Made by a program: the position numbers and the translations under genes. From positions 186,001-250,000 of the IMG/VR virus record IMGVR_UViG_3300027770_000025: a stretch of 64,000 nt of DNA. One strand, given 5' to 3'. The notes beneath the pieces are model-generated. The model made no database searches. It was not told the DNA's origin and worked only from the letters and a program-made list of their open reading frames with translations. Of the stretch, positions 972-63,514 are shown piece after piece. Position 1 is the first letter of the stretch; every line of letters begins with the position of its first letter.

Positions 972-3323
972 TTATTTAGTCCAGCTCCTAGCCTCTATAG
1001 CATCCATTACCTGCTTTGCCGATATTCTCTTGGTGCATTCAAATTGTCTAGATGTTCCTTTATGCTCTGGACACCAGAACCAATCCCCGGGATCAAATGG
1101 GAATTTTTCGGGTGAGTTAAAACAGGAATTACAAACGTCTTCCTTGTGGACCCTAATACAATCCTCATCAAACTCATTATCCTTCTTGGTTACCCCTGAT
1201 ATCACGACAACTTTTTTCCCTAGTGCATGTGCCACCCAAGATAATCCACTGGAAAGCCCTACGAAGAATTCGCAATGCTCTATCCAGTGCATCATTTCTG
1301 TAAGCTCCATGCCTGTCTTATTCATGCAGTTCTTAGGGATCTCGTTCCAATTTCCTTCTGTACCAAAGCTATAATATCGATCTATACAAACTGGGGTTAG
1401 TCCCTTCTTAGTAAGAAGGTCACATAATTTTTCCCAAGAATTGTTATTGTTCCAATGCTTAGCCTGAGCCGTACTATGGCTGGAGAAGCAAACATACTTC
1501 TTATTTAAAGGAGAAGGTTTACCAGATGTCTTTAACTGTGGTCTAACTTTGCCCATATCGGCTAATCCTAGCTGTTTAGCGAAGCCTATTTGTAAAGGTA
1601 AGTCATAGATATAGTCACAGCATATAATGTCTGTATAAGCGCTTAAATCGCCTGGCATTTGTATCAGATTCACATTGGGATATAGATCTTGATACAGAAA
1701 CCCAAAATTACCAACAACATCGCATTCAATCCCATGTCTTTTAGCGTACTCGTCTGCATACGGCATGAACGATATGGTATCACCCAATGCAGCTGTTTTT
1801 AAAATTATAAGCGGATTATGGGATTTAACGTGATTGGGGCTAAAGTAAGATATTATCTGATCCGTGTTTAGCACTCTATAAAATCCAGACTCGTCATCAC
1901 CATTATATTTAAAATGTGGTACATAAATGTCTTCAAGGTATTTTGATTTTTCAGATATTGAAGGAATACACTTAGTCGAAGACACAAAGTCCTTGACTAT
2001 GTCCTTGATATCGTTTCTTCTTATAGTTCCGTCCTCTATTAACACGTGTTGATCTGTTAGATCCATCTTAATTGTTTTTAGAACTTCCACACCATCCTTT
2101 ATAAAGATCTCCCAGTCAATATACTCGTTTTTATCATCAGGAATTGTTGACCAAGCTCTTCCGTTTTTTGCGGTATTTAAAAATGATTTAATCGATCCAG
2201 TTCTGCCATCCCTAAAAAATATTGATTGTCCTACAGCTTCCGGATATGAGCATTTATAAAAATGAGGATGTCTTTTAAACCACGAGTAAAATCCATGATC
2301 TTCTCTCTTTTCTATTCTTTTAGGAATTGTCCGATAATCATTAAGTATAAGATCCTTTTGCGATATCTTACCGAATGATGCATAGTCCATGAGCATTCGT
2401 GAAACGATAACCTCCCATGATATTAAACTTCTTTCCTCTTTACATTCAAGAACATACTGTGAATATCTTTTCATCACATCAGAAACACCATCAACTAGAT
2501 CTACTGTGTTTGCGGTATCTATTCTTTTCATCCCCTTTAAATCAGCTTCCATTAAACCGACAACAGGGATACCCATTGCTATGCTTTCAGTAACTGTTAG
2601 ATTGGGATGCCCGGCCTCAATAGAACCTGGGTTTAAAAAGATGTGGTGCTTTCTCATTTCTGAAAGCGAATCCTCATAATTCAAATCATATATTAAATTA
2701 AGTTTTCTGTATGATGCTACCACATTATTCTTCTCAAAAAACTCCTTGTTGTTTTTACTTGGACATATTATAGTTATTGGTAGATCCAGTACTGCAGCAC
2801 ACTCTATTCCAGGAATGAATCCCTTTCTATCGAATAATGGATCTCCTAAAAGACCGTTGTTTGCCATCATTATTAAACTTGGTCCTTTTTCGATAAGGTC
2901 TTTTGATCTATCCTCGAAATAGTAATCTTCTAAATTAGCTCCGTGGCTGAGATATCTTAGCTGTGGTAAAGAATCGAAATAATCGACAAGATATTTAGCA
3001 TGAACAAAAGATAGAACAGATCCCTTTATAGCTTCCAGATTTTGTTTATAAACAGCTGAATCCTTTCCTAAATGATGTGCGTGGTGGTCGTGGTGAGAAA
3101 AGACATAAGGAATGCCTCTCTCTTTTAAAATTAAAGCTAGATTAGCCATGTGTACATGAACGATATCCCATTCACCTACCCTGACGTCATCTGTGTAAAT
3201 TATTTCAACTTCATGGCCAAGACCTCTTAATACCTTTGTGTACTCCCAGATTATTTTTTCTACTGCTCCCCATCCGTTAGGGGGTATCTGAATTACTCCT
3301 GGTGTGATTTGTGCTATTCTCAT
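972..3323 (-). CDS. GT4 glycosyltransferase fused to a C-terminal AAH/TibC (BAHT)-like heptosyltransferase domain
   Basis: N-term IPPNGWGAVEKII and EAGHPNLTVTES; C-term ALGDTISFMPY, FVGLSSGLSWVAHALGK, and Cys cluster CNSC...WFWCPEH...FEC. Confidence 0.8.
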   Translation of the reverse strand: MRIAQITPGVIQIPPNGWGAVEKIIWEYTKVLRGLGHEVEIIYTDDVRVGEWDIVHVHMANLALILKERGIPYVFSHHDHHAHHLGKDSAVYKQNLEAIKGSVLSFVHAKYLVDYFDSLPQLRYLSHGANLEDYYFEDRSKDLIEKGPSLIMMANNGLLGDPLFDRKGFIPGIECAAVLDLPITIICPSKNNKEFFEKNNVVASYRKLNLIYDLNYEDSLSEMRKHHIFLNPGSIEAGHPNLTVTESIAMGIPVVGLMEADLKGMKRIDTANTVDLVDGVSDVMKRYSQYVLECKEERSLISWEVIVSRMLMDYASFGKISQKDLILNDYRTIPKRIEKREDHGFYSWFKRHPHFYKCSYPEAVGQSIFFRDGRTGSIKSFLNTAKNGRAWSTIPDDKNEYIDWEIFIKDGVEVLKTIKMDLTDQHVLIEDGTIRRNDIKDIVKDFVSSTKCIPSISEKSKYLEDIYVPHFKYNGDDESGFYRVLNTDQIISYFSPNHVKSHNPLIILKTAALGDTISFMPYADEYAKRHGIECDVVGNFGFLYQDLYPNVNLIQMPGDLSAYTDIICCDYIYDLPLQIGFAKQLGLADMGKVRPQLKTSGKPSPLNKKYVCFSSHSTAQAKHWNNNNSWEKLCDLLTKKGLTPVCIDRYYSFGTEGNWNEIPKNCMNKTGMELTEMMHWIEHCEFFVGLSSGLSWVAHALGKKVVVISGVTKKDNEFDEDCIRVHKEDVCNSCFNSPEKFPFDPGDWFWCPEHKGTSRQFECTKRISAKQVMDAIEARSWTK

Positions 3324-3326
3324 TTC

Positions 3327-5261
3327 TTAATTTTTTCTTTTTGCAAATATTACTCCGTGATCTGCATTGTTATCAACCTCTTTTTGTATTAATTCATCAT
3401 AAAGCTTAACCGCAAAATCAGCGCTAACTAATTTTTCTATTAACATATTGACCCTTCCGTCGTTATTGTCATGGAATTCTAGAATTATATTTTTAGCTTT
3501 AGCTAGAGATGCAATATCAGTATTACTAAGAAGATCATATTCAGCACCCTCTATATCAATCTTTAGAAGATCAACTGAATCATGATCAGACATCAAAGAG
3601 TTTAGTGTTTGCGATTTAACCAAAACAGTATTATCACCTATAGTTTTAGCAATGCTTGAAACTAGGCTGTTTCCTGGATCTACACTAAGATTAACATCCT
3701 CGCCATCCGAGGTCAAAGCAATCTCACTGAAGATAACATTTGGATTTTCTGAGTGCATTTTTCTGAATTCATTAGCGGCTAGGTGATTTGGTTCTATTGA
3801 GATAACTTTTTCAAACCCTACATCTAAACAATACTCTGTGAATAATCCAACATTAGCACCAACGTCAATAGCAACTTTCTTTTGGAATATGCTATCGGTC
3901 ATAATGTCATATATTCGGTCAGTGAAGAACTCTTCATAGTTTCTAAATATAGGATCTTTCGTATCCAATCTGCAAGTCTTCTTTGTTACGTTCCTAAATC
4001 TTATTATAGATTCTGAGATCACCTCTTCTCCCTGTTTATATTCAATTAAGAATCCACCAAAATTTGCATTATTTTGGAAATCGTAAATGTGGATGGGCAC
4101 TGGGATTATCCAATATGATCCACCTAAACTAAAGTTTATAGTGCAATGAAATATATTAGAACCGCTGTCCACATCCTTAACATAAACATCACAATCGAGT
4201 TCCTTTATGTTTCTTGAATCCCCTATATAAACTATATCAAGTTTATTATCCCATGGAGAAAATTTATGTATAAACATATCGCTTTTATTATTCATAGCTA
4301 ATTCTTTTTTAAGTTCTAATATTTCCCTTATCTGGTTTGCTATCCCTGTTTTATCATCACTTATAAAAAACTTTAGAGTGTTTGATTCCTGATACATGTC
4401 AACGTAGACAGGGAGATTTCTTAGGAGCAATGGGGCTTTCCAAGATATTGCTTCTTTGATAACAAGAGGGCTTGTTTCTTTATCATTAAATAAAGGTATT
4501 GACGGGAATATAACAAGATCCGCTGCCTGATAGAATAGATCTACGTCATCTCTTTCTCCCCATACCTTACAATTGCTGGGAAGATTGCTTGTGATAGGAT
4601 TCCAATACCATTTAAAATTATCAGCCATTGTACCGATGAAATGAAATTCCACTTCTGGTAGTAGCCTTGCAATCTCTGCTGTTTCCCTTTGATTTTTTCT
4701 TGGTGTAAATATACCTATTTGGATTACGTGTTTCTTATTAGGATCCAGCCCTAATTTTGCTCTGCTATCTAAATAATCTCTTACAGGTTTCTTAGCTATC
4801 TCGTGCTCGATAACTTCTATGGGTACTTTAAGATCTCTTAACAGATTAACCTGCCAAGGGCTAACGACCACAAATTTATCGGGAAGGTATATTTTTTCTT
4901 CAGGGGAAACCGATGAATCGTGCATGGTCTCAAATATTTTATATTCTCTGTCGTCGGAGAATATAATATCCAAAAGATGGTGACTTAAGAATTGCTCGCA
5001 TGGTTCTTCGAAATGTATAATATCAGGTTTCATCTCCTTAATCGCCTTGATAAGAATATCCTCAGGCTTTTCCCCCCATGTTATTATTCTCTCCGCACCA
5101 AGTATGGATTCTATTCTTTTCCTGATTGTATTATAGGAAAACTCGTGTCTTTTTTCAAAAACCCAAACTTCAGCTTCGTCTTTGATTTTGTCTATTTTAT
5201 TCTTTAAATATTCCGGCATTCCTCCGGTAGACAGATATGGTACAATATAAAAAACTCTCAA
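3327..5261 (-). CDS. GT4 glycosyltransferase fused to FkbM-family methyltransferase
   Basis: LSTGGMPEYL, IGIFTPRKNQ, FYQAADLVIFPS...PLVIKEAIS; C-term IDVGANVGLF, SIEP, LLKIDIEGAE. Confidence 0.85.
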   Translation of the reverse strand: MRVFYIVPYLSTGGMPEYLKNKIDKIKDEAEVWVFEKRHEFSYNTIRKRIESILGAERIITWGEKPEDILIKAIKEMKPDIIHFEEPCEQFLSHHLLDIIFSDDREYKIFETMHDSSVSPEEKIYLPDKFVVVSPWQVNLLRDLKVPIEVIEHEIAKKPVRDYLDSRAKLGLDPNKKHVIQIGIFTPRKNQRETAEIARLLPEVEFHFIGTMADNFKWYWNPITSNLPSNCKVWGERDDVDLFYQAADLVIFPSIPLFNDKETSPLVIKEAISWKAPLLLRNLPVYVDMYQESNTLKFFISDDKTGIANQIREILELKKELAMNNKSDMFIHKFSPWDNKLDIVYIGDSRNIKELDCDVYVKDVDSGSNIFHCTINFSLGGSYWIIPVPIHIYDFQNNANFGGFLIEYKQGEEVISESIIRFRNVTKKTCRLDTKDPIFRNYEEFFTDRIYDIMTDSIFQKKVAIDVGANVGLFTEYCLDVGFEKVISIEPNHLAANEFRKMHSENPNVIFSEIALTSDGEDVNLSVDPGNSLVSSIAKTIGDNTVLVKSQTLNSLMSDHDSVDLLKIDIEGAEYDLLSNTDIASLAKAKNIILEFHDNNDGRVNMLIEKLVSADFAVKLYDELIQKEVDNNADHGVIFAKRKN

Positions 5262-7770: not shown

Positions 7771-7952
7771 GGACTTTCTATTGGATAATTTTCATATTGA
7801 AATATTAAATCTTTAAGTAATTTGTTTTCTTGAATGACTCCTTCACATTTATTACCTTCTTGAAACACGGTCATACCTATAAAAATTCCAATAACAAACC
7901 CTATAAGTAATCCTAATCCGGCTGCTCTATATTCGGTTCTTCTATCGGACAT
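7767..7952 (-). CDS. Small membrane protein
   Basis: One Gly-rich hydrophobic helix (GLGLLIGFVIGIFIG). Confidence 0.6.
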   Translation of the reverse strand: MSDRRTEYRAAGLGLLIGFVIGIFIGMTVFQEGNKCEGVIQENKLLKDLIFQYENYPIESP

Positions 7953-7965
7953 TTATTCTTAATTT

Positions 7966-9528
7966 TTATGGTTTAAGTGTGGTGAATTCGCCTTTAATGA
8001 AATTGATATGCTGAGCTTTACCGTCATGATGAATTATAACGTGTGATTGAAGCCATCCGCTAGGTCCGATATTATAATTAACCCTTAGCTTAGTTGATGT
8101 ACCTACTGCAAGTGCTCCGTCTTTTCTACCCGGTGAGTGATAGTGACCGACTACTATTTTAGTATTAAGTTTTCTGAATTGTACTAAGGATCCTCTGGTT
8201 CCGCTAGAACCAATATCTCCATGTTGGCCTAATTCCCAGCCATTGATTACCAAGCTATCGCTTCTGCCTAGAGTTTTGTACTTGGGGTATTTAGCGTTTA
8301 TTAAATAAGGTATAACACCGTTTGGAGCCACACCTTTAAGTAGCAATGCACTGTATTCCATATACTCTATGGAATTTTTCATGGTCGAAGCCTTTCTCCA
8401 ATCAGTTCCTTTTAGCCATCTATCCAAAAAATCATCATGATTACTTCTAACAATTACCACGTTATATTCTTCAAAGCTTTTTAATCCATCAAGCATGGCA
8501 TCAACTTCACTCTTAAGAGAATTAGTTCCGTCTAATTCTCTTTGATATTGTATGAAAGGATCTTTTGATTCGTGGTGGTTAATAGAAAGCCCATCAAATA
8601 CATCATGAAGAACTACGTGTTCCGGTTTTAGATTCTTGAATAGATCAAGTGTTTTTAAAATGACCCTTTCGTCATGCTGGCCGTAGTGAATATCTCCTAA
8701 TATAGCAGCTGCAATCGAATCAATCTTAGAAACTTCCCCTTCCTCAACTTTATAGTATAAATCGCAGAAATCCCCATCTTCGGTAGCTGTAACCTGTCTG
8801 GCAAAGAATGTATTTGCATCTTTAATTTCCACTACAACAAAACCTAATGTGTGATGAAATTCACCTTTCTTTCCTGATTTTGAATCGGTGTAGTTTTTAA
8901 GGGTACATGCTCCAGTGGTCATCATCATCTTAGGAAGATTTCCTTCGAGTACAGGAATTGTTTCCATATGAACTCTTGGTGATCCAAAGACGCAAGAATT
9001 AATTCCACTCATACCTTGTAGTCCTGTCATTGGATCTACTGCAGTAGGTTGAATCTTGACATCTGACATGATCCACATATGTTTATGAACCTCATGACGA
9101 TTGGCATCAAGATATATTGCTATTCTATTTGACCATTCGTCATAACTTCTGTCAGAGAAAACTGAAGTTGGATTTTTATATCTTCCTGCAATGACGTGAA
9201 TGTCTGCATCTATCTCTTTGGCGTAAGCCTCTATGTTCATTATAAAATCCTCATGAACTGGAGTATCGTTCTGTGCCCAAGTAATTATAAATTTCTTTTT
9301 CTTCTTGTCAAATTTTCTTTCCTTGGCCTTTATGTACTGTGGTGACTCTGTTAGTGCTTTTTCTGTTATGCCTAATTTAGAAATCCATTTTTGTATTGTC
9401 CTTTCGGATTTTCCTATAAGATCACTTAGGGTTTTCATTCTCTGATCCCATGTTAAATCTCTGTTCCAGTAAATATCCGACATTTTAGATATTTGCTCGT
9501 CGTTTAATTCTTCAAACTTCATTAGCAA
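7966..9528 (-). CDS. T5 A1-like protein (metallophosphoesterase-fold nuclease)
   Basis: FIITWAQN, TGACTLKNY..SKSGKKGEFHH, LGDIH, HDVFD, SNHDDFL, HGD.G..G.RGS, GHYHSP and GWLQSH match phage T5 A1 motifs as recalled. Confidence 0.75.
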   Translation of the reverse strand: MLMKFEELNDEQISKMSDIYWNRDLTWDQRMKTLSDLIGKSERTIQKWISKLGITEKALTESPQYIKAKERKFDKKKKKFIITWAQNDTPVHEDFIMNIEAYAKEIDADIHVIAGRYKNPTSVFSDRSYDEWSNRIAIYLDANRHEVHKHMWIMSDVKIQPTAVDPMTGLQGMSGINSCVFGSPRVHMETIPVLEGNLPKMMMTTGACTLKNYTDSKSGKKGEFHHTLGFVVVEIKDANTFFARQVTATEDGDFCDLYYKVEEGEVSKIDSIAAAILGDIHYGQHDERVILKTLDLFKNLKPEHVVLHDVFDGLSINHHESKDPFIQYQRELDGTNSLKSEVDAMLDGLKSFEEYNVVIVRSNHDDFLDRWLKGTDWRKASTMKNSIEYMEYSALLLKGVAPNGVIPYLINAKYPKYKTLGRSDSLVINGWELGQHGDIGSSGTRGSLVQFRKLNTKIVVGHYHSPGRKDGALAVGTSTKLRVNYNIGPSGWLQSHVIIHHDGKAQHINFIKGEFTTLKP

Positions 9529-9557
9529 GTGTTAAGTTTATTATTAGCAAGTGTTAA
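9521..9557. repeat. 15-nt direct repeat ATTAGCAAGTGTTAA x2 with 22-nt period
   Basis: Copies at 9521-9535 and 9543-9557, at the start of the A1-like gene. Confidence 0.85.
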
Positions 9558-9621
9558 AGTTACTGGTTATTATATACTTTTTCCAATTAAAGGTTTCAAT
9601 TATATAAAAACGGATAAGCAG

Positions 9622-9900
9622 TTAAAAATTATAAGCTTTATCAGAAAATCTTTCTCCTGTAGCTCCTACTATATCATCATATATTTTAGACTCTTCCGCT
9701 TCTCTTTCCAGCTCCTCGAAGAACTCTTTTATATAAGTGCATTTTTCAAATTCCTCGGTAGACTCATAGTATACAAGAAGAGATTTTTTGATGCTTTCCC
9801 TCTTGGGGTATATTTTTGCTGACAATATGCTACCAACTCCATATTTTTTCATGGTAGCTATTGCATTTTCGAATACACCTCTATCTATTTTTTTTTCCAA
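9622..9900 (-). CDS. Hypothetical protein
   Basis: 92 aa ORF. Confidence 0.6.
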   Translation of the reverse strand: MEKKIDRGVFENAIATMKKYGVGSILSAKIYPKRESIKKSLLVYYESTEEFEKCTYIKEFFEELEREAEESKIYDDIVGATGERFSDKAYNF

Positions 9901-9906
9901 TTCTTA

Positions 9907-10095
9907 TTATATTGTTGTTGGATTATCTATCTCTTTTATTATGCTTAAAAGATGATTGCATTTTTCATAGTCCTCAAAATACTCAAGTAATTTTATGCAA
10001 TCTAATATTTTATCTTTATCCCGGATTCTTTCTCTTACTATCGCAGAATAGATTATTAGATTCTTGTTGTATATTTCCTTCTCATTATCTTTCAT
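9907..10095 (-). CDS. Hypothetical protein sharing a 'YFE.YEKC' type motif with its neighbour
   Basis: LEYFEDYEKC here versus YYESTEEFEKC in 9622..9900. Confidence 0.55.
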   Translation of the reverse strand: MKDNEKEIYNKNLIIYSAIVRERIRDKDKILDCIKLLEYFEDYEKCNHLLSIIKEIDNPTTI

Positions 10096-10172
10096 GAGAT
10101 CATCATCCTGATATTATTTAATTTACAAAAATTGTAGTATTTGCGAATAGCTAGGTTCAGCCTTTTATAAAC

Positions 10173-10207
10173 AAAAAACCCTCATGCTATATATTAACAT
10201 GAGGGGT
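10173..10207 (-). terminator. Rho-independent terminator
   Basis: CCCTCATG/CATGAGGG stem followed by a U-tract on the minus strand. Confidence 0.7.
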
Positions 10208-11403: not shown

Positions 11404-12189
11404 TTACATATTAGACTGCCTCAATATGCCTTTCTCGCTATTAAAGCAATGTAACGAAGTTATGTGCATAACAAAGTAACCAGGGGTAACATCTGACCAT
11501 CTTTCAGGATCTCTTTGTTTTAAGTTGTCTAACAACCACATAAGTTTTCTGCATGCCATATAAACATCGTCTCTAAAGTGTCTTATATAATCACATGATC
11601 TTATGTAATAAGTCATATGAATCCAATTTCCTCTCCTGATAAACTGATATCCCAAGGTGCATGGTACGCGTTCCCCGTGAACTGTTCCTGTATCTTCTGG
11701 AAACCAAATAGGTAAAAATGCTTGTCTAGTAAAAGGCTCTCTCTCCATAAGATCTACCACATCGCCAAAATCGCCATATTCATATCTAATACCTTCCATT
11801 TTACTATTAGGAACCTCTGAAGCAAATTTAGGCCAAATTCTTTCTGGGTATGTATGTGAGAATTTATCATGTCCTCCGAATTGAGCGTTATTTTTCTGAG
11901 CAAAAGGCCATCTAACATGCGATGGGGGAGGATTTAATGGTTGACCCCCTACTCTCTCACCAAAATGCTCATCTGCCCAAGGCAAATTTGGTCTGATCTC
12001 CGTTACTAATTCATCTATGGTGTGTGGCATAAAAAACTGGAAAGAATGATTCATACTTTCCCACATATCGTCAGGAGATTCTATCCCCTGCCATCTTTCT
12101 GTTTTAACAACATAACCGTGATTAAATAGTTCCTCCTTGGTCCATTTAATTGCTTCGCTTGGTTTATAAAAAGTTTTTATGCCTGCCAT
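11404..12189 (-). CDS. Thymidylate-synthase-fold enzyme, dCMP hydroxymethylase (T4 gp42)-like
   Basis: TRQA, catalytic PC, YQF, RSCDYIRHFRDD (T4 gp42 has RSNDVVFGFRND), HITSLHCF. Confidence 0.75.
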   Translation of the reverse strand: MAGIKTFYKPSEAIKWTKEELFNHGYVVKTERWQGIESPDDMWESMNHSFQFFMPHTIDELVTEIRPNLPWADEHFGERVGGQPLNPPPSHVRWPFAQKNNAQFGGHDKFSHTYPERIWPKFASEVPNSKMEGIRYEYGDFGDVVDLMEREPFTRQAFLPIWFPEDTGTVHGERVPCTLGYQFIRRGNWIHMTYYIRSCDYIRHFRDDVYMACRKLMWLLDNLKQRDPERWSDVTPGYFVMHITSLHCFNSEKGILRQSNM

Positions 12190-16576: not shown

Positions 16577-18034
16577 TTATTTATTTTCAAAGTAGATTCC
16601 TGCATGGGCTTCACCCTTTGCTTTACCCGGACTATATTTATCTTCAGGCTCTTCAGTAACCACGAATGCCTTATTAGGGTTTACTATTAATCCCATTCTT
16701 CTCATTAGTGTTCTATTTGCTAAGAATGGTGTGCTTTTATCTGTTCTGCCGACAGGGGAAACTTTAACATTAGGTATTAGGCTTCCGTTAAATTCAAGGT
16801 TAATTTCTATGATAGGTCTAGTGTGTGTATCGCTTCCTATTTCAGCATCAGAATATCCAACGATATCATTAACGAACTTTTTATCACCAACTGACCAAAT
16901 AAGCTTTTTACCATTCTCTTCAATCTCGTCTGCATGAAGAGAGCAGGATTTTGCACCATTTCCTGTGTCAAATTTAGCTACCATGTCACCAATTCCAGGT
17001 ACAGATACTTTCTCAAGATAACCAATTTCTAAATTAGCATAGCTCCAATTAGCCTTATCTAAGATGTAATCAAGTACATCATTAACAATGGGTTTACCTA
17101 TAGCCTTGGAAATACCCTCGGTTCCAGGGGATGAATTAACCTCTAAAATATATGGTTTCTTAGTTTTCTTATCTATCATGATATCTACTCCACACCAGTG
17201 GCATCCAACTGCGTTAGCTGCTTTGCAAGCTATTTCTACTAAATCCTCTGGAATTTCGTAATTTGATACAGATCCGCCTAAAGAATAATTAGTTCTAAAA
17301 TCTTTATCTACCGCCTCTCTTTTCATAGACCCTAATATAATACAGTTGTCTGAAGATGGTTTGATTGGATCAAAGTTCTTAATTATAACCTGAATTCTAA
17401 GGTCAAAGTTTGAATCGATTTTTTCCTGAACTAATATCTCGCTGTTCTCGTCAAGTTTTCTTATCGTTTGATATACAGACTTTAAAGATGCGTAAGAATC
17501 CACAATAGAAACCCCGATACCTTGGGTTCCTGATAAAAGCTTCATGATGATTGGGAATTTGCCACCTATCTTTTCTAGTGCAGAATCAAGAAATTCCTCA
17601 TTCGGTACTAAAGCATATTTAGGAACGGGTAATCCCGCTTCCTCCATATATTGTGAAGTTATGTACTTATTTTCACAAACCTCAATGGATTCCAGTGTAT
17701 TCACAGTGAAATATCGGTCAGCTTCTAATTGTGTCAAAATTTGCTTAGTGTAAGAGTTTTCTATCACTCCTCTTCTTGGTATAATCACCGTTGAATTGGG
17801 ATCAATTAAAATTCCCTCTTTTCCAGTTTTTAATAGATGCCCATTATAAACTTTTTCTATCATCACTTGATTTACGTCAACCACATAGCATTCAACGCCC
17901 CTTTTTTCGCATTGTTCTGCGAAAGACTTAGATGTCTTACTTCCCTGCGTATTTCCAGTCAGAACTATAACCTTAGTAGTTTCACCTTTTGCTTCATTCA
18001 AAAAAGACCAAAAATCCAATACTTTACCAGCCAT
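16577..18034 (-). CDS. rimK: RimK-family ATP-grasp ligase fused to RimK-associated aspartic-protease-like domain
   Basis: CENK...LPVPK, PIIMKLLSGTQGIGV, LVQE...DLR, FRTNYSLGG, GVDIM, EVNSSPG; C-term AKFDTGNG...FLANR. Confidence 0.85.
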   Translation of the reverse strand: MAGKVLDFWSFLNEAKGETTKVIVLTGNTQGSKTSKSFAEQCEKRGVECYVVDVNQVMIEKVYNGHLLKTGKEGILIDPNSTVIIPRRGVIENSYTKQILTQLEADRYFTVNTLESIEVCENKYITSQYMEEAGLPVPKYALVPNEEFLDSALEKIGGKFPIIMKLLSGTQGIGVSIVDSYASLKSVYQTIRKLDENSEILVQEKIDSNFDLRIQVIIKNFDPIKPSSDNCIILGSMKREAVDKDFRTNYSLGGSVSNYEIPEDLVEIACKAANAVGCHWCGVDIMIDKKTKKPYILEVNSSPGTEGISKAIGKPIVNDVLDYILDKANWSYANLEIGYLEKVSVPGIGDMVAKFDTGNGAKSCSLHADEIEENGKKLIWSVGDKKFVNDIVGYSDAEIGSDTHTRPIIEINLEFNGSLIPNVKVSPVGRTDKSTPFLANRTLMRRMGLIVNPNKAFVVTEEPEDKYSPGKAKGEAHAGIYFENK

Positions 18035-18506: not shown

Positions 18507-19655
18507 TTAAAATAAAGCGTTTATTAAGAATAAATTTGGACTTATTGTATTGTAGCCCATAACCTCAATGAATCTATTAATAGGATCCAGAATTGTTTTG
18601 GTAAATTGCATGTCATGGTCTATCGGGGGTGCATATTCATAAGGATAAGTTCCCTGTGCATAAGCAAAAACGTTATTGTCCATAATGGACTTAGTCTTAA
18701 CAAAATAATAATTGATTTTTTCTCCACTTCTAATTAATGGGTACTTGTCTTTATATTTTGATCTGTTCAGCAGAAGATTATGATAAGCTGCTGCTCTAAC
18801 TTGAATAGGACATCCCTTTGTGACTTCTAATGCACTTACATCATTAAGGATATACTTTTCATAGTTATTAATTGCTATTGCGGCAGAGATGTTCCTAGGC
18901 TCTTGTATTTTAAAGTCTCTTTTAATATCTTTAAGCTCTCTTACAAATTCTCTTATATCGAATGCACGGCCTTTAGCAAAAATGAATTTCGTTAGGTAAA
19001 TTAGTTTCTCCCTAACAAAAGGTGGGGTTCCGCCTTTGATCATTTCCACTCCTACTGTCTTTATCTGTGAGAGTGGATCCATATGTAGACCATCTGAATA
19101 AACTAGATTAGTAACATACTTCTTCTTTCCTAAGAATATACCATTTATTGCCAGGTTCTCCATCTCGAAATCCTGGTAATTTATCGTGCCCCATTTTTTG
19201 GAGTATTTCTCAAAGCATGCTTTAAGATAATCTGCTAACCTATATTCGTTTATTTTTAAAATAAGATCTTTCGGATCGCCATTCCAATCACACGAATCTA
19301 CTACCTCCTGAAAGGTAACATAGTTAGAATCGGTGTCTCCATAAATAACAAGAGGTTTAGAAACTCTCTTAACCTTAGTTAATTCTAGCTTGTCGTGGAG
19401 TTCCTTATCTACATGCCAATACTCATGAAAATATTTATGAAGCACCTTCTCCGAATATTTGATCAAGTCCTGGCCCTGAAGTGTCACTGCCTCCGCAACG
19501 TCAGGGTTAAAGCAAACAAACCAATTATTTCCAATCGCTCCGTAGATGGAGTTCATCGTTAATTTTACAGCCTGTTCCTCGTTCTTTAACTCGTTCTTTA
19601 GTGAGGTAAGTTTTTCTATTCTTTCTTCAATTTCTTTTATTTCTTCCTGATTCAT
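18507..19655 (-). CDS. Family-B DNA polymerase, C-terminal subunit (gp43B-like)
   Basis: Motif B KLTMNSIYG, motif C YGDTDS, KKKY, GVEMIK; no exonuclease or motif A. Confidence 0.92.
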   Translation of the reverse strand: MNQEEIKEIEERIEKLTSLKNELKNEEQAVKLTMNSIYGAIGNNWFVCFNPDVAEAVTLQGQDLIKYSEKVLHKYFHEYWHVDKELHDKLELTKVKRVSKPLVIYGDTDSNYVTFQEVVDSCDWNGDPKDLILKINEYRLADYLKACFEKYSKKWGTINYQDFEMENLAINGIFLGKKKYVTNLVYSDGLHMDPLSQIKTVGVEMIKGGTPPFVREKLIYLTKFIFAKGRAFDIREFVRELKDIKRDFKIQEPRNISAAIAINNYEKYILNDVSALEVTKGCPIQVRAAAYHNLLLNRSKYKDKYPLIRSGEKINYYFVKTKSIMDNNVFAYAQGTYPYEYAPPIDHDMQFTKTILDPINRFIEVMGYNTISPNLFLINALF

Positions 19656-58457: not shown

Positions 58458-60206
58458 TTAATTCTGGACTTGCCCTGTAATTACTACAGAAGCAGCACCA
58501 GAGGCAACATAAGTAGTAACTATACTTCCTACACTAGCATAATTAGTCAATGATATGTATCCGCTAATTCCATCACACGTTTTCCAAAATACCCTAGGAT
58601 TTGCGTTAGTTGTACTAGCTATGCCCAAAAAAGTTAAATCAACATATAAACACTCCGTAGGGTAAGTGTTCAAAGAAGGTTGGTATCTAAATCTCATGTA
58701 ATATGGGATTGATGATATAGTGGATCCCCCGCCCTTAGCTGAATTGAAACTAAAGTAATTATATACTAATCCAGCTATTTTATATGATTGAGAATTACTA
58801 ATATCATTCAAGAATATTCTATATGTGTTGGTATATCCAGTATTATAAAGTCCATCCACATTTTGATCATATGAAGTAGGAATTCTAAGGAAAACCTCAT
58901 TGGCAGCTGGTAGGTTATATGAAGTAGGCGTAATTAATATCATATTGCTGTCCCAAAGAGAAACAGGAGTTAAATCCATTACGTTATAAACAGTTTCCGA
59001 AGTTGTCGTGGTTGCTGACAAATATCTTGCGCTCAGCGTAATAGTCGAAGATCTAACCTCCCTTACTCTCTTAACTGGATAAAGATAAGGACCTCCTGTA
59101 GCTCCAGCAGCCTGTCCCCCTGTAGATCCGAACGTGGTCTGTATATGTTTTCCCGAAGAAACCGACCCTCTAGCTTTAGCAGAGAATATTGGTGCGTTTT
59201 TAAGATCAAAAAATTCAAAAGCAGAATCCTGAGTGCTAGAAGCTAGAATTGATATCCCTGCTGTTGATGTAGATACCCCCGAAGGGTTATTCTTAGTAGC
59301 ATCAAAAACTGTTTGCCCGGCATAAAAGTAAGTATTAGACTGTACTTTTATAGGTATTCTTGAGGATAAACTTGTAGAAGAAAGAGTTAGGTTAGAAGAA
59401 GCTATCGAAAGATTTCCACCAACCCCAATAGTTGTATTTGAGTATAAATAAAAATTACCGGTTCCCCCTATATTAATATTCTGAACGGAGCTTATCTCTG
59501 CGTTATCTCCATATAATATAGATCTTGCGGTATATGAGTCTATAGTAATCCCATCTCTAGAAGATATCTCAAGACTACCTGTAGAATAATATCTCAATGA
59601 AGCTGAATTACCCCCTGTTCTCCAATAGAAACCAGGTACTCCCGTTGAGGTTGCTCCTGTTTTAGAGAAAGTTAATATAGGCCTGGTTATCTGATCTTCA
59701 GTAGAAATTAATAACTTGCTTCTATTTGGATTTATTCCTGTGATTGTGGTATAATCATCTCCTATAACTAAAGACGTGTTAAACGCACTTAAATTAGAAT
59801 TTATGCCTACCACATACTTGTCTGTTACCCCAGCAGGTCCTACTATACCTCCATATATGGAAAAGTACGTAGAAGTAAATAACGAATATCCTGTATATGA
59901 CCAGGAACCTCCAGTACCTAAGGTGCTTATCTGATAGTCACTAGTATTAGAATCTATCCACATATCGAAAGCATTACCTGAGGTTGGCTGGTCATCCATC
60001 TTAGACCAAAGGGTACCTCTTAAACCAGTAGCTCCAGTAGCTCCTTTTTTTCCTGAAGGCCCATCATATCCTGCTGGACCCTTAAGTCCTTGCTTCCCAT
60101 TAGGTCCAACAGCAAAGGAAAGTATCTGGTCAAAATTATAATTGATCTTTCTTTTTATCACTGAAGCTGAATCACCAGCAAAAATATATTTAGTATTAAA
60201 GTGCAT
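58458..60206 (-). CDS. Tail fibre/baseplate-type protein with short collagen segment (paralog 1)
   Basis: INYNFDQI, G-X-Y run, RGTLW, DMWIDS. Confidence 0.65.
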   Translation of the reverse strand: MHFNTKYIFAGDSASVIKRKINYNFDQILSFAVGPNGKQGLKGPAGYDGPSGKKGATGATGLRGTLWSKMDDQPTSGNAFDMWIDSNTSDYQISTLGTGGSWSYTGYSLFTSTYFSIYGGIVGPAGVTDKYVVGINSNLSAFNTSLVIGDDYTTITGINPNRSKLLISTEDQITRPILTFSKTGATSTGVPGFYWRTGGNSASLRYYSTGSLEISSRDGITIDSYTARSILYGDNAEISSVQNINIGGTGNFYLYSNTTIGVGGNLSIASSNLTLSSTSLSSRIPIKVQSNTYFYAGQTVFDATKNNPSGVSTSTAGISILASSTQDSAFEFFDLKNAPIFSAKARGSVSSGKHIQTTFGSTGGQAAGATGGPYLYPVKRVREVRSSTITLSARYLSATTTTSETVYNVMDLTPVSLWDSNMILITPTSYNLPAANEVFLRIPTSYDQNVDGLYNTGYTNTYRIFLNDISNSQSYKIAGLVYNYFSFNSAKGGGSTISSIPYYMRFRYQPSLNTYPTECLYVDLTFLGIASTTNANPRVFWKTCDGISGYISLTNYASVGSIVTTYVASGAASVVITGQVQN

Positions 60207-60209
60207 ATT

Positions 60210-61925: not shown

Positions 61926-61960
61926 TTTTTCTACGGGATCTTAATAAGTTATTGTATATA

Positions 61961-63514
61961 TCAATAAGTGAAAGATCCCCCGGAACCTCCAGTAGATCCT
62001 ATGGCACCACTTGATGACCAAGGTGCATAAGCACGATAGTAAACCGTAGTAACCCCAGTTCCGGTAACCCCTCTGGCAATAGTAAGATCCACTGTTGGTG
62101 ATAGGAATGGCAAGGTTACCTTGGTTACACAAGAAGCTGAAGCCCCCGTGCCCACCCCTATAAACTTGAAACCTGAAGCTGATGTTGTTGGAGAATCTGA
62201 GCTATTGTGAACTGTTATGTCAATCGATTCACCCATTTGAAGTCCTCCAGATCCGCCCCATCCTAAATTAGAGTCATTATATAGCCCAAGACCAACATGC
62301 TGTCCTGAAACTATAGCTGGATTTATTATCATGGTATTTCCGTTATTTAAAGGAGATCCTAGCGTTGCAGAAGTTCTAGAAATAAAATACCAATTTATTG
62401 CAGTAGCTCCGGAATAACCAACAGTTCTCTGAGTAGTAGACGGATATGATATACCCTCGACTGTTTTATTCATTTTAAGCTTTCCCTTAGTTGAAAGCCA
62501 AACTTGCTTTCCTGTAGAGTTCACTAGTTCCAAATGATAAGTAAATTGGGAAATCGTACTATATGTGTCACCTATTCTGGTTGATCTAAATCCAGCTGTT
62601 CCGGATGGGGTTATCTGTGTGTGGGGAGATGCAGATGCTACTGTTGCTATTGATCTAATAGGATCAAGAAAGCCTCCGGATACTCCGGATATATTAAGAT
62701 ACTTACTTGTTACATTAAGCTGCCCAGTTAAATTGATATTATATCCGCCTGTTGCATATATTCCTGATGTCGAGTCTACTCCGTAGTTTATATCGGTACC
62801 TTTTTGTGATTCCATTCTCAAAGATGAAAACCTCGATTCAAATCCCCCGGAAACCCCAATATCTAAAGTACCACCAGGGACTCTTATACCTAATGAATTG
62901 TCGGTTGGTATAGTAGAAGGCCAATAAAAATATGGATGTTGTATATAATCGGTCACACTTCCATCTGCTACATCACTTCTAGAAAATTCTAAAAGTGGGG
63001 AATCATTTACAGCTGAATCGTTGGAAATAGAGAATTTAGAAAGCAATTCATTTATAACACCATTCTCAGGTGTAACATCGCTTAGTATAAACAGATAGTT
63101 CTTAGGTAATGTCTGAGCCATTTGTATAGCAGCACCAGTTCCCCCGTTATATGTAAAATCGTCTATTCTGAATAGATCTCCACCCGATCTTATATTATAT
63201 CCCGTTGGGTTCCACCCAGTTAACTCGAGGGTGTATATGTTACTGGTTATCGAGTCTATCCAATAATCCCCCTCCTGAGCGGATCCAGCAGGAGCTAAGG
63301 AAGAAACAAACCATCTAGTTCCTCTCGCACCATCTAATCCAGTATGGCCAAAAGTTCCAGAATCACCTATTGCTCCTCTGTCACCAGTAGGACCTACCGT
63401 ACCCTGAGTTCCCCCGTGTAGCTCCACTGTTTCGTCGAAGTTATTATTCAGCTTATTTATCAGTTGACTTTGGTTGTCGCTGTAGCTTAAGGCCTGTATA
63501 TTAGTATTTGGCAT
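61961..63514 (-). CDS. Tail fibre/baseplate-type protein with short collagen segment (paralog 3)
   Basis: LNNNFDET, G-X-Y run, RGTRW, DYWIDS. Confidence 0.65.
   Translation of the reverse strand: MPNTNIQALSYSDNQSQLINKLNNNFDETVELHGGTQGTVGPTGDRGAIGDSGTFGHTGLDGARGTRWFVSSLAPAGSAQEGDYWIDSITSNIYTLELTGWNPTGYNIRSGGDLFRIDDFTYNGGTGAAIQMAQTLPKNYLFILSDVTPENGVINELLSKFSISNDSAVNDSPLLEFSRSDVADGSVTDYIQHPYFYWPSTIPTDNSLGIRVPGGTLDIGVSGGFESRFSSLRMESQKGTDINYGVDSTSGIYATGGYNINLTGQLNVTSKYLNISGVSGGFLDPIRSIATVASASPHTQITPSGTAGFRSTRIGDTYSTISQFTYHLELVNSTGKQVWLSTKGKLKMNKTVEGISYPSTTQRTVGYSGATAINWYFISRTSATLGSPLNNGNTMIINPAIVSGQHVGLGLYNDSNLGWGGSGGLQMGESIDITVHNSSDSPTTSASGFKFIGVGTGASASCVTKVTLPFLSPTVDLTIARGVTGTGVTTVYYRAYAPWSSSGAIGSTGGSGGSFTY

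What the first reader, a model, noticed from the sequence alone, without database searches (positions are those of the whole stretch)
972..3323. Phage GT4 fused to an iron-binding BAHT-type (AAH/TibC-like) heptosyltransferase
Seen: the C-terminal domain has GT9-like motifs and a four-Cys cluster (CNSC...WCP...EC). Known: this Cys arrangement binds the structural iron in bacterial autotransporter heptosyltransferases, which O-heptosylate proteins using ADP-heptose. Inference: the phage may heptosylate virion or host-surface proteins, or drain the host ADP-heptose pool. The fusion to GT4 suggests building a di- or oligosaccharide.
Basis: partly seen in the sequence, partly recalled or inferred. 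Interest (0 to 1): 0.6.

Follow-up and report, generated by a model that had tools for sequence, protein, structure and literature searches.

The report
Huge phage's double sugar-adding enzyme
A 348-kb freshwater phage encodes one protein joining an ordinary sugar-transferring enzyme to a relative of the iron-containing enzymes that bacteria use to put heptose sugars on their adhesins. Gene neighbourhoods suggest the phage uses it to coat its own serine/threonine-rich collagen-like fibres with sugars, which has not been described for any phage.

Summary
Window 972-3323 (-) is an intact 783-aa gene.

**Domains**
- Residues 1-321 form a GT4-type GT-B fold.
- Residues ~341-783 form a complete TibC/AAH-type (BAHT) module.
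- The catalytic Asp, the Thr/Lys/Trp sugar-phosphate contacts and all four finger cysteines are invariant in 34 homologues.

**Context**
- The fusion is a conserved gene of a clade of huge, probably Bacteroidota-infecting, phages.
- A GT1+FkbM-methyltransferase gene lies upstream in 4 of 4 loci, adjacent in two.
- The same genome has a second, stand-alone BAHT. It sits in the virion module, just downstream of giant collagen-like (Gly-Ser/Thr-Ser)n fibre genes. This held in 6 of 6 phage contigs examined, five of them syntenic relatives.

**Interpretation**
- Best reading: a phage protein O-glycosylation system that builds a short, methyl-capped glycan on virion fibre proteins.
- The acceptor, the donor and the metal are all inferred.

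**Caveats**
- The module lies outside the classical autotransporter-linked clade.
- Its clade has lost TibC's adenine-contact Arg286 (0 of 27), so ADP-heptose is uncertain.

Verdict: a new variant of a known kind.

The parts
972..3323 (-). Whole gene: 783-aa bifunctional glycosyltransferase (GT4-type domain + BAHT-type module)
   Evidence: ORF and translation. 1169 homologues at E<=1e-3; the 120 best listed are almost all 756-794 aa and cover 98-100% of the query at 42-91% identity (a few are truncated fragments).
2361..3323 (-). Residues 1-321: GT4-type GT-B (retaining-type) glycosyltransferase domain
2034..2303 (-). Residues 341-430: eight-stranded beta domain at the position of TibC's N-terminal beta-barrel
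   Evidence: DSSP of the model shows eight strands between 345 and 430. VIA aligns the model from 341/367 to TibC from residue 50/30. Pfam TibC_1st was not detected, and the hhalign confidence is low here.
1830..2033 (-). Residues 431-498: helix/strand insert between the beta domain and the catalytic domain, with no counterpart in TibC
   Evidence: Model secondary structure. The HMM and TibC sequence matches start only at residue 499-500.
975..1829 (-). Residues 499-783: BAHT (TibC/AAH-type) catalytic domain
   Evidence: TIGR04414 220.9 bits, above the cut-off of 200. TibC 4rap E 1.4e-38. Pfam GT9 E 6.6e-10.
1779..1781 (-). Asp515, equivalent of TibC catalytic base Asp110
   Evidence: Aligned to TibC D110, the residue changed in the D110A entry 4rb4. 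Invariant in 34 of 34 homologues and in 127 of 127 tree rows. Role from PMC4358343.
1293..1295 (-). Met677 at the position of TibC Arg286 (adenine N1 contact)
   Evidence: alignment. M/V/I in 34 of 34 fusions. Arg in 0 of 27 in the fusion clade against 16 of 16 in the classical clade.
1341..1370 (-). Residues 652-661: beta-hairpin at the place of TibC's 'thumb'
   Evidence: Strands 652-655 and 658-661 in the model. F653, G654, W659 and N660 are invariant. The tip is Glu/Asp-Gly instead of TibC Phe265-Val266.
1035..1133 (-). Cys731, Cys734, Cys751, Cys763: four-Cys metal finger
   Evidence: Aligned to TibC Cys339/342/358/370 (for their role). Invariant in 34 of 34 and in 27 of 27 in the clade.
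3327..5261 (-). Upstream partner gene: 644-aa GT1 (GT4-type C-terminal domain) + FkbM methyltransferase, 3 nt from the fusion gene's start
   Evidence: Pfam Glycos_transf_1 E 2.2e-11 (residues 166-321) and Methyltransf_21 E 3.2e-12 (466-608). TIGR01444 FkbM 81.7 bits. An orthologue of ~650 aa lies upstream of the fusion in L007, L011 and L012.
58458..60206 (-). 582-aa Ser/Thr-rich protein with a collagen-repeat segment: candidate acceptor (inference only)
   Evidence: S+T 24.7%. Pfam Collagen E 3.2e-5, below cut-off.
61961..63514 (-). 517-aa Ser/Thr- and Gly-rich protein with a collagen-repeat segment: candidate acceptor (inference only)
   Evidence: S+T 23.4%, Gly 13.5%. Pfam Collagen E 1.4e-3, below cut-off.

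Best explanation
The gene encodes a soluble, cytoplasmic enzyme with two glycosyltransferase active sites. The C-terminal module is a TibC/AAH-type protein O-glycosyltransferase: beta domain, GT9-like GT-B catalytic domain, thumb hairpin and Cys4 metal finger. I propose that it starts glycosylation by transferring a nucleotide-activated sugar onto Ser/Thr hydroxyls of a repetitive phage protein. The sugar is most likely a heptose. It may come from host ADP-heptose, or from another nucleotide, because the adenine-contact Arg is missing. The N-terminal GT4-type domain then adds a second sugar. The co-transcribed upstream GT1+FkbM enzyme adds a further sugar and O-methylates it. The most likely acceptors are the phage's own collagen-like (Gly-Ser/Thr-Ser)n fibre proteins, which would give the virion a glycan coat.

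Shown: domain identities, conservation of catalytic and metal-ligand residues, the conserved two-gene module, and the linkage of the paralogous BAHT to fibre and structural genes.

Inferred: the acceptor, the donor, the metal, the order of the steps and the oligomeric state.
For: **Identity**
- TIGR04414 scores above its curated cut-off.
- D515, T618, K622, W696 and the four Cys are invariant or nearly so. Their roles in TibC come from PMC4358343.
- The GT4 fold is supported, with invariant R166-K167-G168, E236 and E246.

**Real, conserved gene**
- 1169 homologues, many on 100-600 kb contigs.
- Near-identical DNA recurs in freshwater metagenomes of about ten studies besides the possible source sample.
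- Short contigs from three metatranscriptome libraries lie on it.

**Oligosaccharide module**
- A GT1+FkbM gene lies upstream in 4 of 4 loci. It is directly adjacent in two; extra unknown or GT2 genes are inserted in the other two.
- The only two PF00534-type GT genes of the genome each sit directly upstream of a BAHT.

**Protein/fibre acceptor**
- Classical BAHTs sit next to their giant repetitive substrate gene: aah-aidA and Burkholderia/alphaproteobacterial loci.
- The genome's second BAHT lies in the order giant collagen-like fibre gene, DUF6445, GT2, GT2, GT1, BAHT, neck, terminase, sheath.
- The GT1-BAHT-neck-TerL-sheath order holds in four relatives (L008, L095-L097).
- Collagen-like G-[ST]-S genes lie within 10 kb in 6 of 6 phage contigs examined, including the non-syntenic L010.
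- They also lie next to BAHT genes in five low-GC contigs binned as MAGs.

**Donor availability**
- A heptose-7-P kinase homologue occurs in 128 of 201 sampled genomes of the presumed host phylum.
- The phage carries a small nucleotidyltransferase whose best family hits are heptose-1-P adenylyltransferase.
Against: - No acceptor is demonstrated. The fusion gene lies among replication and nucleotide-metabolism genes, not next to fibre genes. The fibre link is borrowed from a paralogue only 35% identical and belonging to a different deep clade.
- The fusion clade never has Arg at TibC Arg286, which is invariant in the classical clade. R286A abolished or largely diminished TibC activity.
- The thumb tip is polar rather than hydrophobic. 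A TibC-like dodecamer, which TibC needs for activity, is therefore not assured.
- A collagen triple helix is not the beta-helix that TibC recognises.
- The phage has no gmhA and no heptose kinase.
- The host is inferred, not known.
- Metatranscriptome contigs do not prove transcription.
Confidence: 0.5

Rival explanations
1. Host-surface remodelling. During infection the enzyme, with its GT1+FkbM partner, glycosylates host proteins, such as large secreted adhesins or gliding-motility proteins of a Bacteroidota host, or host envelope glycoconjugates. This would block superinfection or change cell-surface properties.
For: Phage glycosyltransferases that alter host serotype are well known (reviewed in the text cited). 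The gene sits among early or metabolic genes rather than structural ones. Classical BAHTs modify surface adhesins before export. A relative's locus carries a gene with a T9SS sorting domain.
Against: No membrane segment, flippase, polymerase or lipid-carrier gene is nearby. The BAHT-specific features match a protein acceptor, not LPS: TIGR02193 scores 26.6 bits against a cut-off of 185. The paralogous BAHT is firmly embedded in the virion module next to phage-encoded repetitive proteins. No host target is identifiable.
Confidence: 0.2
2. DNA hypermodification. Some or all of these GT-B domains glycosylate hydroxymethylated pyrimidines in phage DNA to evade restriction.
For: The genome encodes a canonical thymidylate synthase and a second, divergent TS-like protein that could be a pyrimidine hydroxymethylase. 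It also has at least 11 GT domains and a NodU-like carbamoyltransferase. Phage DNA glycosyltransferases are GT-B enzymes; a cyanophage 'DNA alpha-GT' appears as a weak fold match to the GT4 domain. The literature on viral DNA glycosylation is cited.
Against: The BAHT module keeps the family-specific beta domain, thumb and Cys4 finger of protein-modifying enzymes. BAHT genes in phages and bacteria alike are linked to giant repetitive protein genes. No hydroxymethylase activity is established, and the TS-like hit is weak in Pfam (E 0.0026).
Confidence: 0.07
3. ADP-heptose sink. The enzyme mainly consumes the host ADP-heptose pool to perturb LPS core synthesis, and the acceptor is unimportant.
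For: The phage lacks gmhA and the heptose kinase, so it would depend on the host pool.
Against: The conserved fusion to a second GT and the conserved GT1+FkbM partner point to a defined multi-sugar product. The adenine-contact Arg is missing. A hydrolase would be a simpler sink.
Confidence: 0.03

Closest known systems
TibC (ETEC) and AAH (DAEC), the bacterial autotransporter heptosyltransferases (BAHT; NCBIfam TIGR04414; PDB 4rap/4rb4)
   Same: The score is above the curated family cut-off. TibC is the best PDB match by sequence and fold. The catalytic Asp, the Thr/Lys/Trp donor contacts, the four Cys of the iron finger and Phe368 are conserved. Ser691 matches AAH Ser294, which tolerates both heptose epimers, rather than TibC Pro300.
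   Different: - It is encoded by a phage and fused behind a GT4-type domain.
- A ~70-residue insert lies before the catalytic domain.
- The adenine-contact Arg286 is replaced by Met.
- The thumb tip is polar.
- It belongs to a separate deep clade made only of metagenomic proteins.
- No autotransporter gene is nearby.
The same genome's stand-alone BAHT (G000:341787-342968, 393 aa) and its orthologues in related huge phages
   Same: Same family (TIGR04414 264.7 bits). 35% identical to the fusion's module over 334 aa. It is also preceded by a PF00534-type GT gene.
   Different: - It is single-domain and keeps Arg286, but lacks the thumb hairpin.
- It belongs to a different clade, sister (support 91) to Arenicellales-type gammaproteobacterial enzymes.
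- It is fixed in the fibre-neck-terminase module.
Microcystis phage Mel-JY01 1226-aa protein annotated 'methyltransferase FkbM' (PP395634.1), a cultured phage
   Same: It carries GT1, TibC_1st and GT9/BAHT domains in one polypeptide. It lies next to a 'structural protein' gene and about 7 kb from the terminase gene. It is one of only four phage records among 50,697 with a BAHT module.
   Different: It has a different domain order and length. Its BAHT module falls in another clade. It infects a cyanobacterium. No experimental data were found.
Mycobacteriophage virion glycosylation (Freeman et al. 2023, as cited in PMC12619734)
   Same: Phage-encoded glycosyltransferases O-glycosylate the phage's own structural proteins.
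   Different: The acceptors there are C-terminal tails of capsid and tail-tube subunits. As far as I know those enzymes are not BAHT-type, but this was not tested here.
Glycosylated collagen-like surface fibres: Bacillus anthracis BclA and Mimivirus fibrils (my own knowledge, not checked here)
   Same: Collagen-like Gly-X-Thr/Ser repeats form a hair-like surface layer that is heavily O-glycosylated.
   Different: Those systems use other glycosyltransferase families and none is a tailed phage. The parallel is an analogy only.
SdgA/SdgB, staphylococcal Ser-Asp-repeat adhesin O-glycosyltransferases (GT4)
   Different: The similarity is at generic GT4 level, far below family cut-offs.

Membership tests
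BAHT (TibC/AAH; TIGR04414) | Score above the curated equivalog cut-off of the family HMM | tested here: met
   220.9 bits against a cut-off of 200, E 2.4e-65, residues 499-777 on profile positions 80-372 of 374.
BAHT (TibC/AAH; TIGR04414) | Catalytic base (TibC Asp110) | tested here: met
   Asp515 aligns to it. Invariant in 34 of 34 and 127 of 127 sequences.
BAHT (TibC/AAH; TIGR04414) | Beta-phosphate and heptose contacts (TibC Thr226, Lys230, Trp305) | tested here: met
   Thr618, Lys622 and Trp696 align to them. K and W are invariant; T is 32 of 34.
BAHT (TibC/AAH; TIGR04414) | Adenine-specific contact (TibC Arg286) | tested here: not met
   Met677 in the window. M/V/I in 34 of 34 fusions. 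Arg in 0 of 27 in its clade against 16 of 16 in the classical clade.
BAHT (TibC/AAH; TIGR04414) | Four-Cys finger (TibC Cys339, 342, 358, 370) | tested here: met
   Cys731, 734, 751 and 763 align one-to-one and are invariant.
BAHT (TibC/AAH; TIGR04414) | The finger binds ferric iron | not testable with these tools
   Sequence cannot tell Fe from Zn. This needs ICP-MS or UV-visible spectra of purified protein.
BAHT (TibC/AAH; TIGR04414) | N-terminal flattened beta-barrel (TibC 1-97; Pfam TibC_1st), required for TibC activity | tested here: inconclusive
   The model has eight strands between 345 and 430. VIA aligns from TibC residue 30-50. Pfam TibC_1st is not detected, and hhalign confidence is low there.
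BAHT (TibC/AAH; TIGR04414) | Beta-hairpin thumb with two hydrophobic tip residues (TibC Phe265, Val266) | tested here: inconclusive
   The hairpin is present and conserved (F653, G654, W659, N660). The tip is Glu/Asp-Gly, and alignment at the tip is uncertain.
BAHT (TibC/AAH; TIGR04414) | Ring-shaped dodecamer | not testable with these tools
   A homodimer prediction of residues 340-783 gave no answer (score 0.00). That is neither support nor evidence against.
BAHT (TibC/AAH; TIGR04414) | Gene linked to an autotransporter adhesin substrate gene | tested here: not met
   The neighbours are GT1+FkbM, an endonuclease, RNase HII and others. The classical pairing is seen in L093 (aah-aidA). The phage paralogue is instead linked to collagen-like fibre genes.
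BAHT (TibC/AAH; TIGR04414) | Placement inside the clade of characterised enzymes | tested here: not met
   The classical clade (AAH, Burkholderia, Bordetella, Lentisphaeria) has 100% support. The fusion's module falls in a separate clade with 99% support, made of metagenomic proteins (quick IQ-TREE, LG+G4, unrooted).
BAHT (TibC/AAH; TIGR04414) | Transfers heptose from ADP-heptose to Ser of a protein | not testable with these tools
   This needs an enzyme assay.
GT4-type retaining GT-B glycosyltransferases (N-terminal domain) | GT-B fold with GT4 enzymes as nearest solved structures | tested here: met
GT4-type retaining GT-B glycosyltransferases (N-terminal domain) | Pfam GT4/GT1 family HMM above gathering score | tested here: not met
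   Glyco_transf_4 scores 16.3 bits against 28.5; Glyco_trans_4_4 scores 13.4 against 29.7. No Glycos_transf_1 hit.
GT4-type retaining GT-B glycosyltransferases (N-terminal domain) | Conserved donor-binding motifs (basic pair at the start of the C-lobe; paired Glu motif) | tested here: inconclusive
   R166-K167-G168, E236 and E246 are invariant in 34 homologues. Their equivalence to catalytic motifs rests on my reading of the sequence, not on a structure-based residue mapping.
LPS heptosyltransferases WaaC/WaaF/WaaQ (GT9 proper) | Family HMM above cut-off | tested here: not met
   TIGR02193 scores 26.6 against 185.3; WaaC NF008204 17.7 against 437; TIGR02195 11.6 against 134.6.

The most novel reading that the evidence does not exclude
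Huge phages of freshwater Bacteroidota carry their own protein O-glycosylation machinery built around BAHT-type enzymes. These enzymes, possibly ring-shaped and processive like TibC, load sugars onto the thousands of Ser/Thr in collagen-like (Gly-Ser/Thr-Ser)n virion fibres. Fused and neighbouring GT4/GT1/GT2, methyl-, carbamoyl- and sulfo-transferases then build variable glycans. The result would be a mucin-like 'bottle-brush' coat whose composition differs between related phages. The fusion clade, having lost the adenine-contact Arg, may use a sugar donor other than ADP-heptose.
Probability: 0.3. Interest if true: 0.8.

Novelty: new variant of a known kind. Interest (0 to 1): 0.6.

Why it matters
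BAHTs are known only as virulence-associated enzymes that hyper-heptosylate autotransporter adhesins of Proteobacteria. This work gives three results.
- The family is much wider: 448 clusters at 50% identity reach E<=1e-30.
- Deep, uncharacterised clades occur in huge phages, often fused to other glycan-building domains.
- In phages the genes are linked to giant collagen-like fibre genes.

If the proposed function holds, it would be a second, mechanistically distinct case of phage virion glycosylation, after the mycobacteriophages. It would also give a new acceptor class for BAHTs (collagen-like repeats). It could explain why huge phages carry so many glycosyltransferases. Such a coat could affect host recognition, particle stability, and how sticky or grazable the particles are in lakes.

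The enzymes could also serve as tools for site-dense O-glycosylation of repetitive proteins.

Tried and rejected
- **Generic LPS heptosyltransferase (WaaC/WaaF):** rejected. Family scores are far below cut-off, and TibC outranks all other structures.
- **Near-identical DNA in the phage collection:** none. The source record may have been left out of that collection.
- **Phage-encoded ADP-heptose pathway:** no gmhA and no heptose-7-P kinase. There is only an ambiguous 133-aa nucleotidyltransferase.
- **Homodimer prediction of the BAHT module (residues 340-783, two copies):** 'no answer', score 0.00. This is neither support nor evidence against oligomerisation.
- **T9SS sorting domain in the phage genome as a host marker:** no hit, but the control search also found nothing anywhere, so it is uninformative.
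- **Using a locus directly as a taxonomic centre for a genome search:** I redid it through a genome handle. The phylum of that handle rests only on the record title ('uncultured Bacteroides sp.').
- **Literature:** no paper on phage BAHT/TibC-like enzymes or on Mel-JY01. One huge-phage paper lists a 'heptosyltransferase I' as an auxiliary metabolic gene and interprets it as LPS-related.
- **The two BAHTs of the genome as recent duplicates:** rejected. They fall in different well-supported clades.
- **Model coordinates:** not available in the script box, so Cys-Cys geometry and the distance between the two active sites could not be measured.
Full report
**1. The observation**

Window 972-3323 (minus strand) is one uninterrupted ORF of 783 codons. 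Its ATG lies 3 nt after the stop of the upstream gene (3327-5261).

A phmmer search of all PDB chains returns only TibC (4rap/4rb4, E 1.4e-38). In the printed alignment the four cysteines pair with TibC Cys339, 342, 358 and 370. The TibC structure paper identifies these as the tetrahedral ligands of a ferric ion. That 'iron finger' is needed for dimer and dodecamer assembly and for activity (PMC4358343).

NCBIfam's equivalog model for this family (TIGR04414, hepto_Aah_TibC) scores 220.9 bits, above its cut-off of 200. The models for LPS heptosyltransferases I, II, WaaC and WaaQ score 11-27 bits against cut-offs of 135-467. The C-terminal domain is therefore specifically BAHT-like, not generically GT9-like.

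**2. Structure**

- An AlphaFold2 model built on 34 homologues is confident (mean pLDDT 87.7, pTM 0.79).
- Foldseek ranks TibC first (E 7e-25, TM 0.68 on the target).
- Pfam's GT4 models stay below threshold, so the 'GT4' label rests on fold and on conserved motifs (R166-K167-G168, E236, E246).
- Between the two domains the model shows eight beta strands (345-430) where TibC has its N-terminal flattened barrel. A ~70-residue insert (431-498) follows, with no TibC counterpart. Pfam's TibC_1st model does not detect the barrel, so I treat it as probable, not proven.

**3. Residue-level comparison with TibC**

Residue roles are from PMC4358343.

| TibC residue | Role in TibC | Window residue | Conservation |
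|---|---|---|---|
| Asp110 | Catalytic base | Asp515 | Invariant |
| Thr226, Lys230 | Beta-phosphate contacts | Thr618, Lys622 | Conserved |
| Trp305 | Heptose O4 contact | Trp696 | Invariant |
| Phe368 | Packs with the thumb-tip residues at the dimer-dimer contact | Phe761 | Conserved |
| Pro300 / AAH Ser294 | Stereoselectivity | Ser691 (invariant Ser) | The AAH state, which accepts both heptose epimers |
| Arg286 | Hydrogen-bonds adenine N1; explains ADP specificity | Met677 | Met/Val/Ile in all 34 fusion homologues |
| Phe265-Val266 | Hydrophobic thumb tip | Glu/Asp-Gly | Hairpin itself present and well conserved |

Sources. Two features differ.

- **Arg286.** On a 127-sequence alignment, Arg is present in 16 of 16 members of the classical clade and in 0 of 27 members of the clade holding the window's enzyme.
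- **Thumb tip.** It is polar rather than hydrophobic.

Donor nucleotide and quaternary structure may therefore differ from TibC. A homodimer prediction gave no answer either way.

**4. The genome and host**

- The window is bases 186001-250000 of a 348,582-bp virus record with 36% G+C.
- The record has a T4-type large terminase, a sheath and a neck protein.
- The terminase is closest to uncultured 460-640 kb phages, Sphingomonas phage PAU, Tenacibaculum phages and the Lak megaphages.
- The window also encodes DnaK, DnaJ, class I ribonucleotide reductase, topoisomerase II subunits and a split family-B polymerase.
- A homologous locus in a relative carries a gene with a type-IX-secretion sorting domain.
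- A recently described Bacteroidota-associated jumbo-phage lineage shares the DnaK/DnaJ trait (PMC12619734).
- A Bacteroidota host is therefore likely but inferred.
- Near-identical DNA recurs in freshwater and lake metagenomes of about ten studies from 2017 to 2024. Short contigs from three metatranscriptome libraries fall within the gene. This is compatible with transcription but does not prove it.

**5. How common is the fusion?**

- A search of 5.8 billion proteins finds 1169 relatives at E<=1e-3. The 120 best listed are almost all 756-794 aa and cover 98-100% of the query, at 42-91% identity. Many lie on contigs of 100-600 kb. The JGI pipeline already names many of them 'autotransporter strand-loop-strand O-heptosyltransferase'.
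- Against 1.84 billion cluster representatives, the BAHT module alone finds 1162 clusters, 448 of them at E<=1e-30. Many are multidomain proteins of 600-1900 aa.
- Examples I checked are GT1+BAHT (960 aa), GT2+GT1+BAHT (1145 aa), and a 1226-aa GT1+TibC_1st+GT9 protein of the cultured Microcystis phage Mel-JY01.
- The module is rare in deposited phage genomes: 4 of 50,697 records. It has no PHROG family.
- BFVD holds two clear viral look-alikes. One is auto-named 'Glycosyltransferase Aah/TibC'.
- I found no paper that discusses a phage BAHT.

**6. Gene context of the fusion**

- The upstream gene (3327-5261) encodes a GT1 domain plus an FkbM-type methyltransferase.
- An orthologue of ~650 aa lies upstream of the fusion in all three relatives examined (42-60% identity). 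It is sometimes separated by an inserted unknown protein or a GT2.
- The conserved unit therefore carries at least three glycosyltransferase domains and a methyltransferase.
- In this genome the region 8-13 kb further on also holds a NodU-like carbamoyltransferase, a GT2 and a small HIGH-motif nucleotidyltransferase. The latter's best but sub-threshold hits are heptose-1-phosphate adenylyltransferase.

**7. A second BAHT and the fibre link**

The genome has a second, stand-alone BAHT: 393 aa, TIGR04414 264.7 bits, at genome 341787-342968. It keeps Arg286 but lacks the thumb. It is 35% identical to the fusion's module.

Its neighbourhood, read in the direction of transcription, is as follows.

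1. A giant collagen-like gene that runs off both contig ends. The open piece at the low-coordinate end has at least 2599 aa of Gly-Ser/Thr-Ser-type triplets. The piece at the other end has 388 aa and ends in what looks, by sequence inspection, like an S74-type chaperone. I read the two pieces as one gene of a circularly permuted genome, which is an inference.
2. DUF6445
3. GT2
4. GT2
5. A 91-aa protein
6. GT1
7. BAHT
8. An 829-aa neck protein
9. A 259-aa protein
10. Terminase
11. Sheath

The GT1-BAHT-neck-terminase-sheath order is kept in four relatives (L008, L095-L097). What lies just upstream varies. In one it includes two sulfotransferases, an FkbM methyltransferase and an APS kinase. A fifth contig, L010, is not syntenic. 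Its BAHT sits among methyltransferases, a carbamoyltransferase and an epimerase, next to a giant repeat gene.

Collagen-like G-[ST]-S proteins lie within 10 kb in 6 of 6 phage contigs examined. They also lie beside BAHT genes in five low-GC contigs binned into bacterial MAGs.

In Proteobacteria the BAHT gene is followed by a 1500-2600-aa Ser/Thr-rich gene, the autotransporter. The annotated aah-aidA pair is an example.

The general rule seems to be that a BAHT gene sits beside its giant repetitive substrate gene. In phages that neighbour is a collagen-like fibre.

**8. Phylogeny**

A maximum-likelihood tree of 127 BAHT modules was built (quick IQ-TREE, LG+G4, unrooted; rows over 75% identical were removed).

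- It recovers a classical clade (AAH, Burkholderia, Bordetella, alphaproteobacteria, Lentisphaeria) with 100% support.
- The fusion's module falls in a separate clade of 26 metagenomic proteins with 99% support.
- The second BAHT falls in a third clade with 99% support, next to Arenicellales-type gammaproteobacterial enzymes (support 91).
- The phage's two BAHTs are therefore not recent duplicates.

**9. Donor supply**

The phage lacks gmhA and the heptose-7-phosphate kinase. A strong match to that kinase occurs in 128 of 201 sampled genomes of the phylum of a MAG labelled Bacteroides; 98 of them are above the cut-off. A host-supplied ADP-heptose pool is therefore plausible. This does not remove the doubt raised by the missing Arg286.

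**10. Conclusion**

The most likely function is protein O-glycosylation that starts at the BAHT module. The fused GT4 domain and the GT1+FkbM partner would then extend and cap the glycan. The phage's collagen-like fibres are the most likely acceptors. That last step is inferred from the context of a paralogue and from the family's general habit, so I put it at about one in two.

The main rivals are modification of host surface proteins or glycoconjugates (about 0.2) and DNA glycosylation (under 0.1). The DNA reading stays open because the genome has a second, divergent thymidylate-synthase-like gene and many GTs.

By sequence and fold the enzyme belongs with the BAHTs. It fails four defining features of the characterised enzymes:
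- the adenine-contact Arg;
- placement in the classical clade;
- linkage to an autotransporter gene;
- possibly the hydrophobic thumb tip.

I therefore class it as a new variant of a known kind.

Noticed in passing
outside the window: G000:341787-347255 (locus L004:13205-18673): A second, stand-alone TibC/AAH-type gene (393 aa) lies in a glycan cluster (DUF6445, two GT2, GT1). The cluster sits between a giant collagen-like fibre gene and the neck, terminase and sheath genes. The GT1-BAHT-neck order is conserved in four related phage contigs.
   Followed up: yes
outside the window: G000:1-7798 and 347414-348582 (loci L006, L004): Both contig ends lie inside collagen-like Gly-Ser/Thr-Ser repeats. 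One piece has at least 2599 aa and the other 388 aa; the latter ends in what looks by sequence inspection like an S74-type chaperone. I read them as one giant fibre gene of a circularly permuted genome, broken at the assembly ends. A further 789-aa collagen-like protein lies at 7811-10180.
   Followed up: partly
window 58458-63514 (-): Three consecutive Ser/Thr- and Gly-rich proteins (582, 571 and 517 aa). Two have short collagen-repeat segments. They are followed just past the window by proteins of 1200-1850 aa, probably more fibre or baseplate components.
   Followed up: partly
window 35757-37157 (-) and 18507-19655 (-): The family-B DNA polymerase appears split. The exonuclease plus the start of the polymerase domain is in one ORF (466 aa), and the later polymerase part in another (382 aa). 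About 16 kb separates them, holding ribonucleotide reductase, topoisomerase, DnaJ and UvdE genes.
   Followed up: no
window 39978-41867 (-) and 23131-24174 (-): Full-length DnaK (Hsp70, E 2.7e-253) and DnaJ homologues. Relatives also carry GrpE. This matches a trait reported for Bacteroidota-associated 'moraphages' (PMC12619734).
   Followed up: partly
window 11404-12189 (-) and G000:180422-181633: A divergent thymidylate-synthase-like protein (261 aa; Pfam E 0.0026, phrog_160 E 8e-24) occurs in addition to a canonical ThyA of 403 aa with an insertion. It could be a pyrimidine hydroxymethylase, which would imply modified DNA.
   Followed up: no
outside the window: G000:174042-179163 (locus L005): This stretch holds a NodU-like carbamoyltransferase (562 aa), a GT2 (241 aa), a metallophosphatase, a 133-aa nucleotidyltransferase (best hits heptose-1-P adenylyltransferase and glycerol-3-P cytidylyltransferase, both below cut-off) and a thioesterase. 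It looks like a further sugar-modification neighbourhood 8-13 kb from the finding.
   Followed up: partly
window 29079-30344 (-): A 421-aa GT2 domain protein with a TPR-like segment. It is one of six PF00535 matches in the genome.
   Followed up: no
window 16577-18034 (-) and 45391-47412 (-): A RimK-like ATP-grasp ligase (485 aa), and a 673-aa protein whose C-terminal part resembles nicotinamide-nucleotide adenylyltransferase.
   Followed up: no
locus L008:3323-6731 (related 328-kb phage, GCA_013572995.1): At the place where this phage has two GT2 genes, the relative has two sulfotransferases, an FkbM methyltransferase and an APS kinase. This suggests sulfated, methylated glycans and rapid turnover of the decoration genes between related phages.
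   Followed up: no
loci L020-L023, L026, L028, L047, L077: Low-GC (28-37%) contigs binned into MAGs of unrelated phyla (Bacteroides, Rickettsiaceae, Chloroflexota, Staphylococcaceae and others) carry multidomain BAHT fusions, often with collagen-like genes. They look like mis-binned phage or giant-virus contigs.
   Followed up: partly
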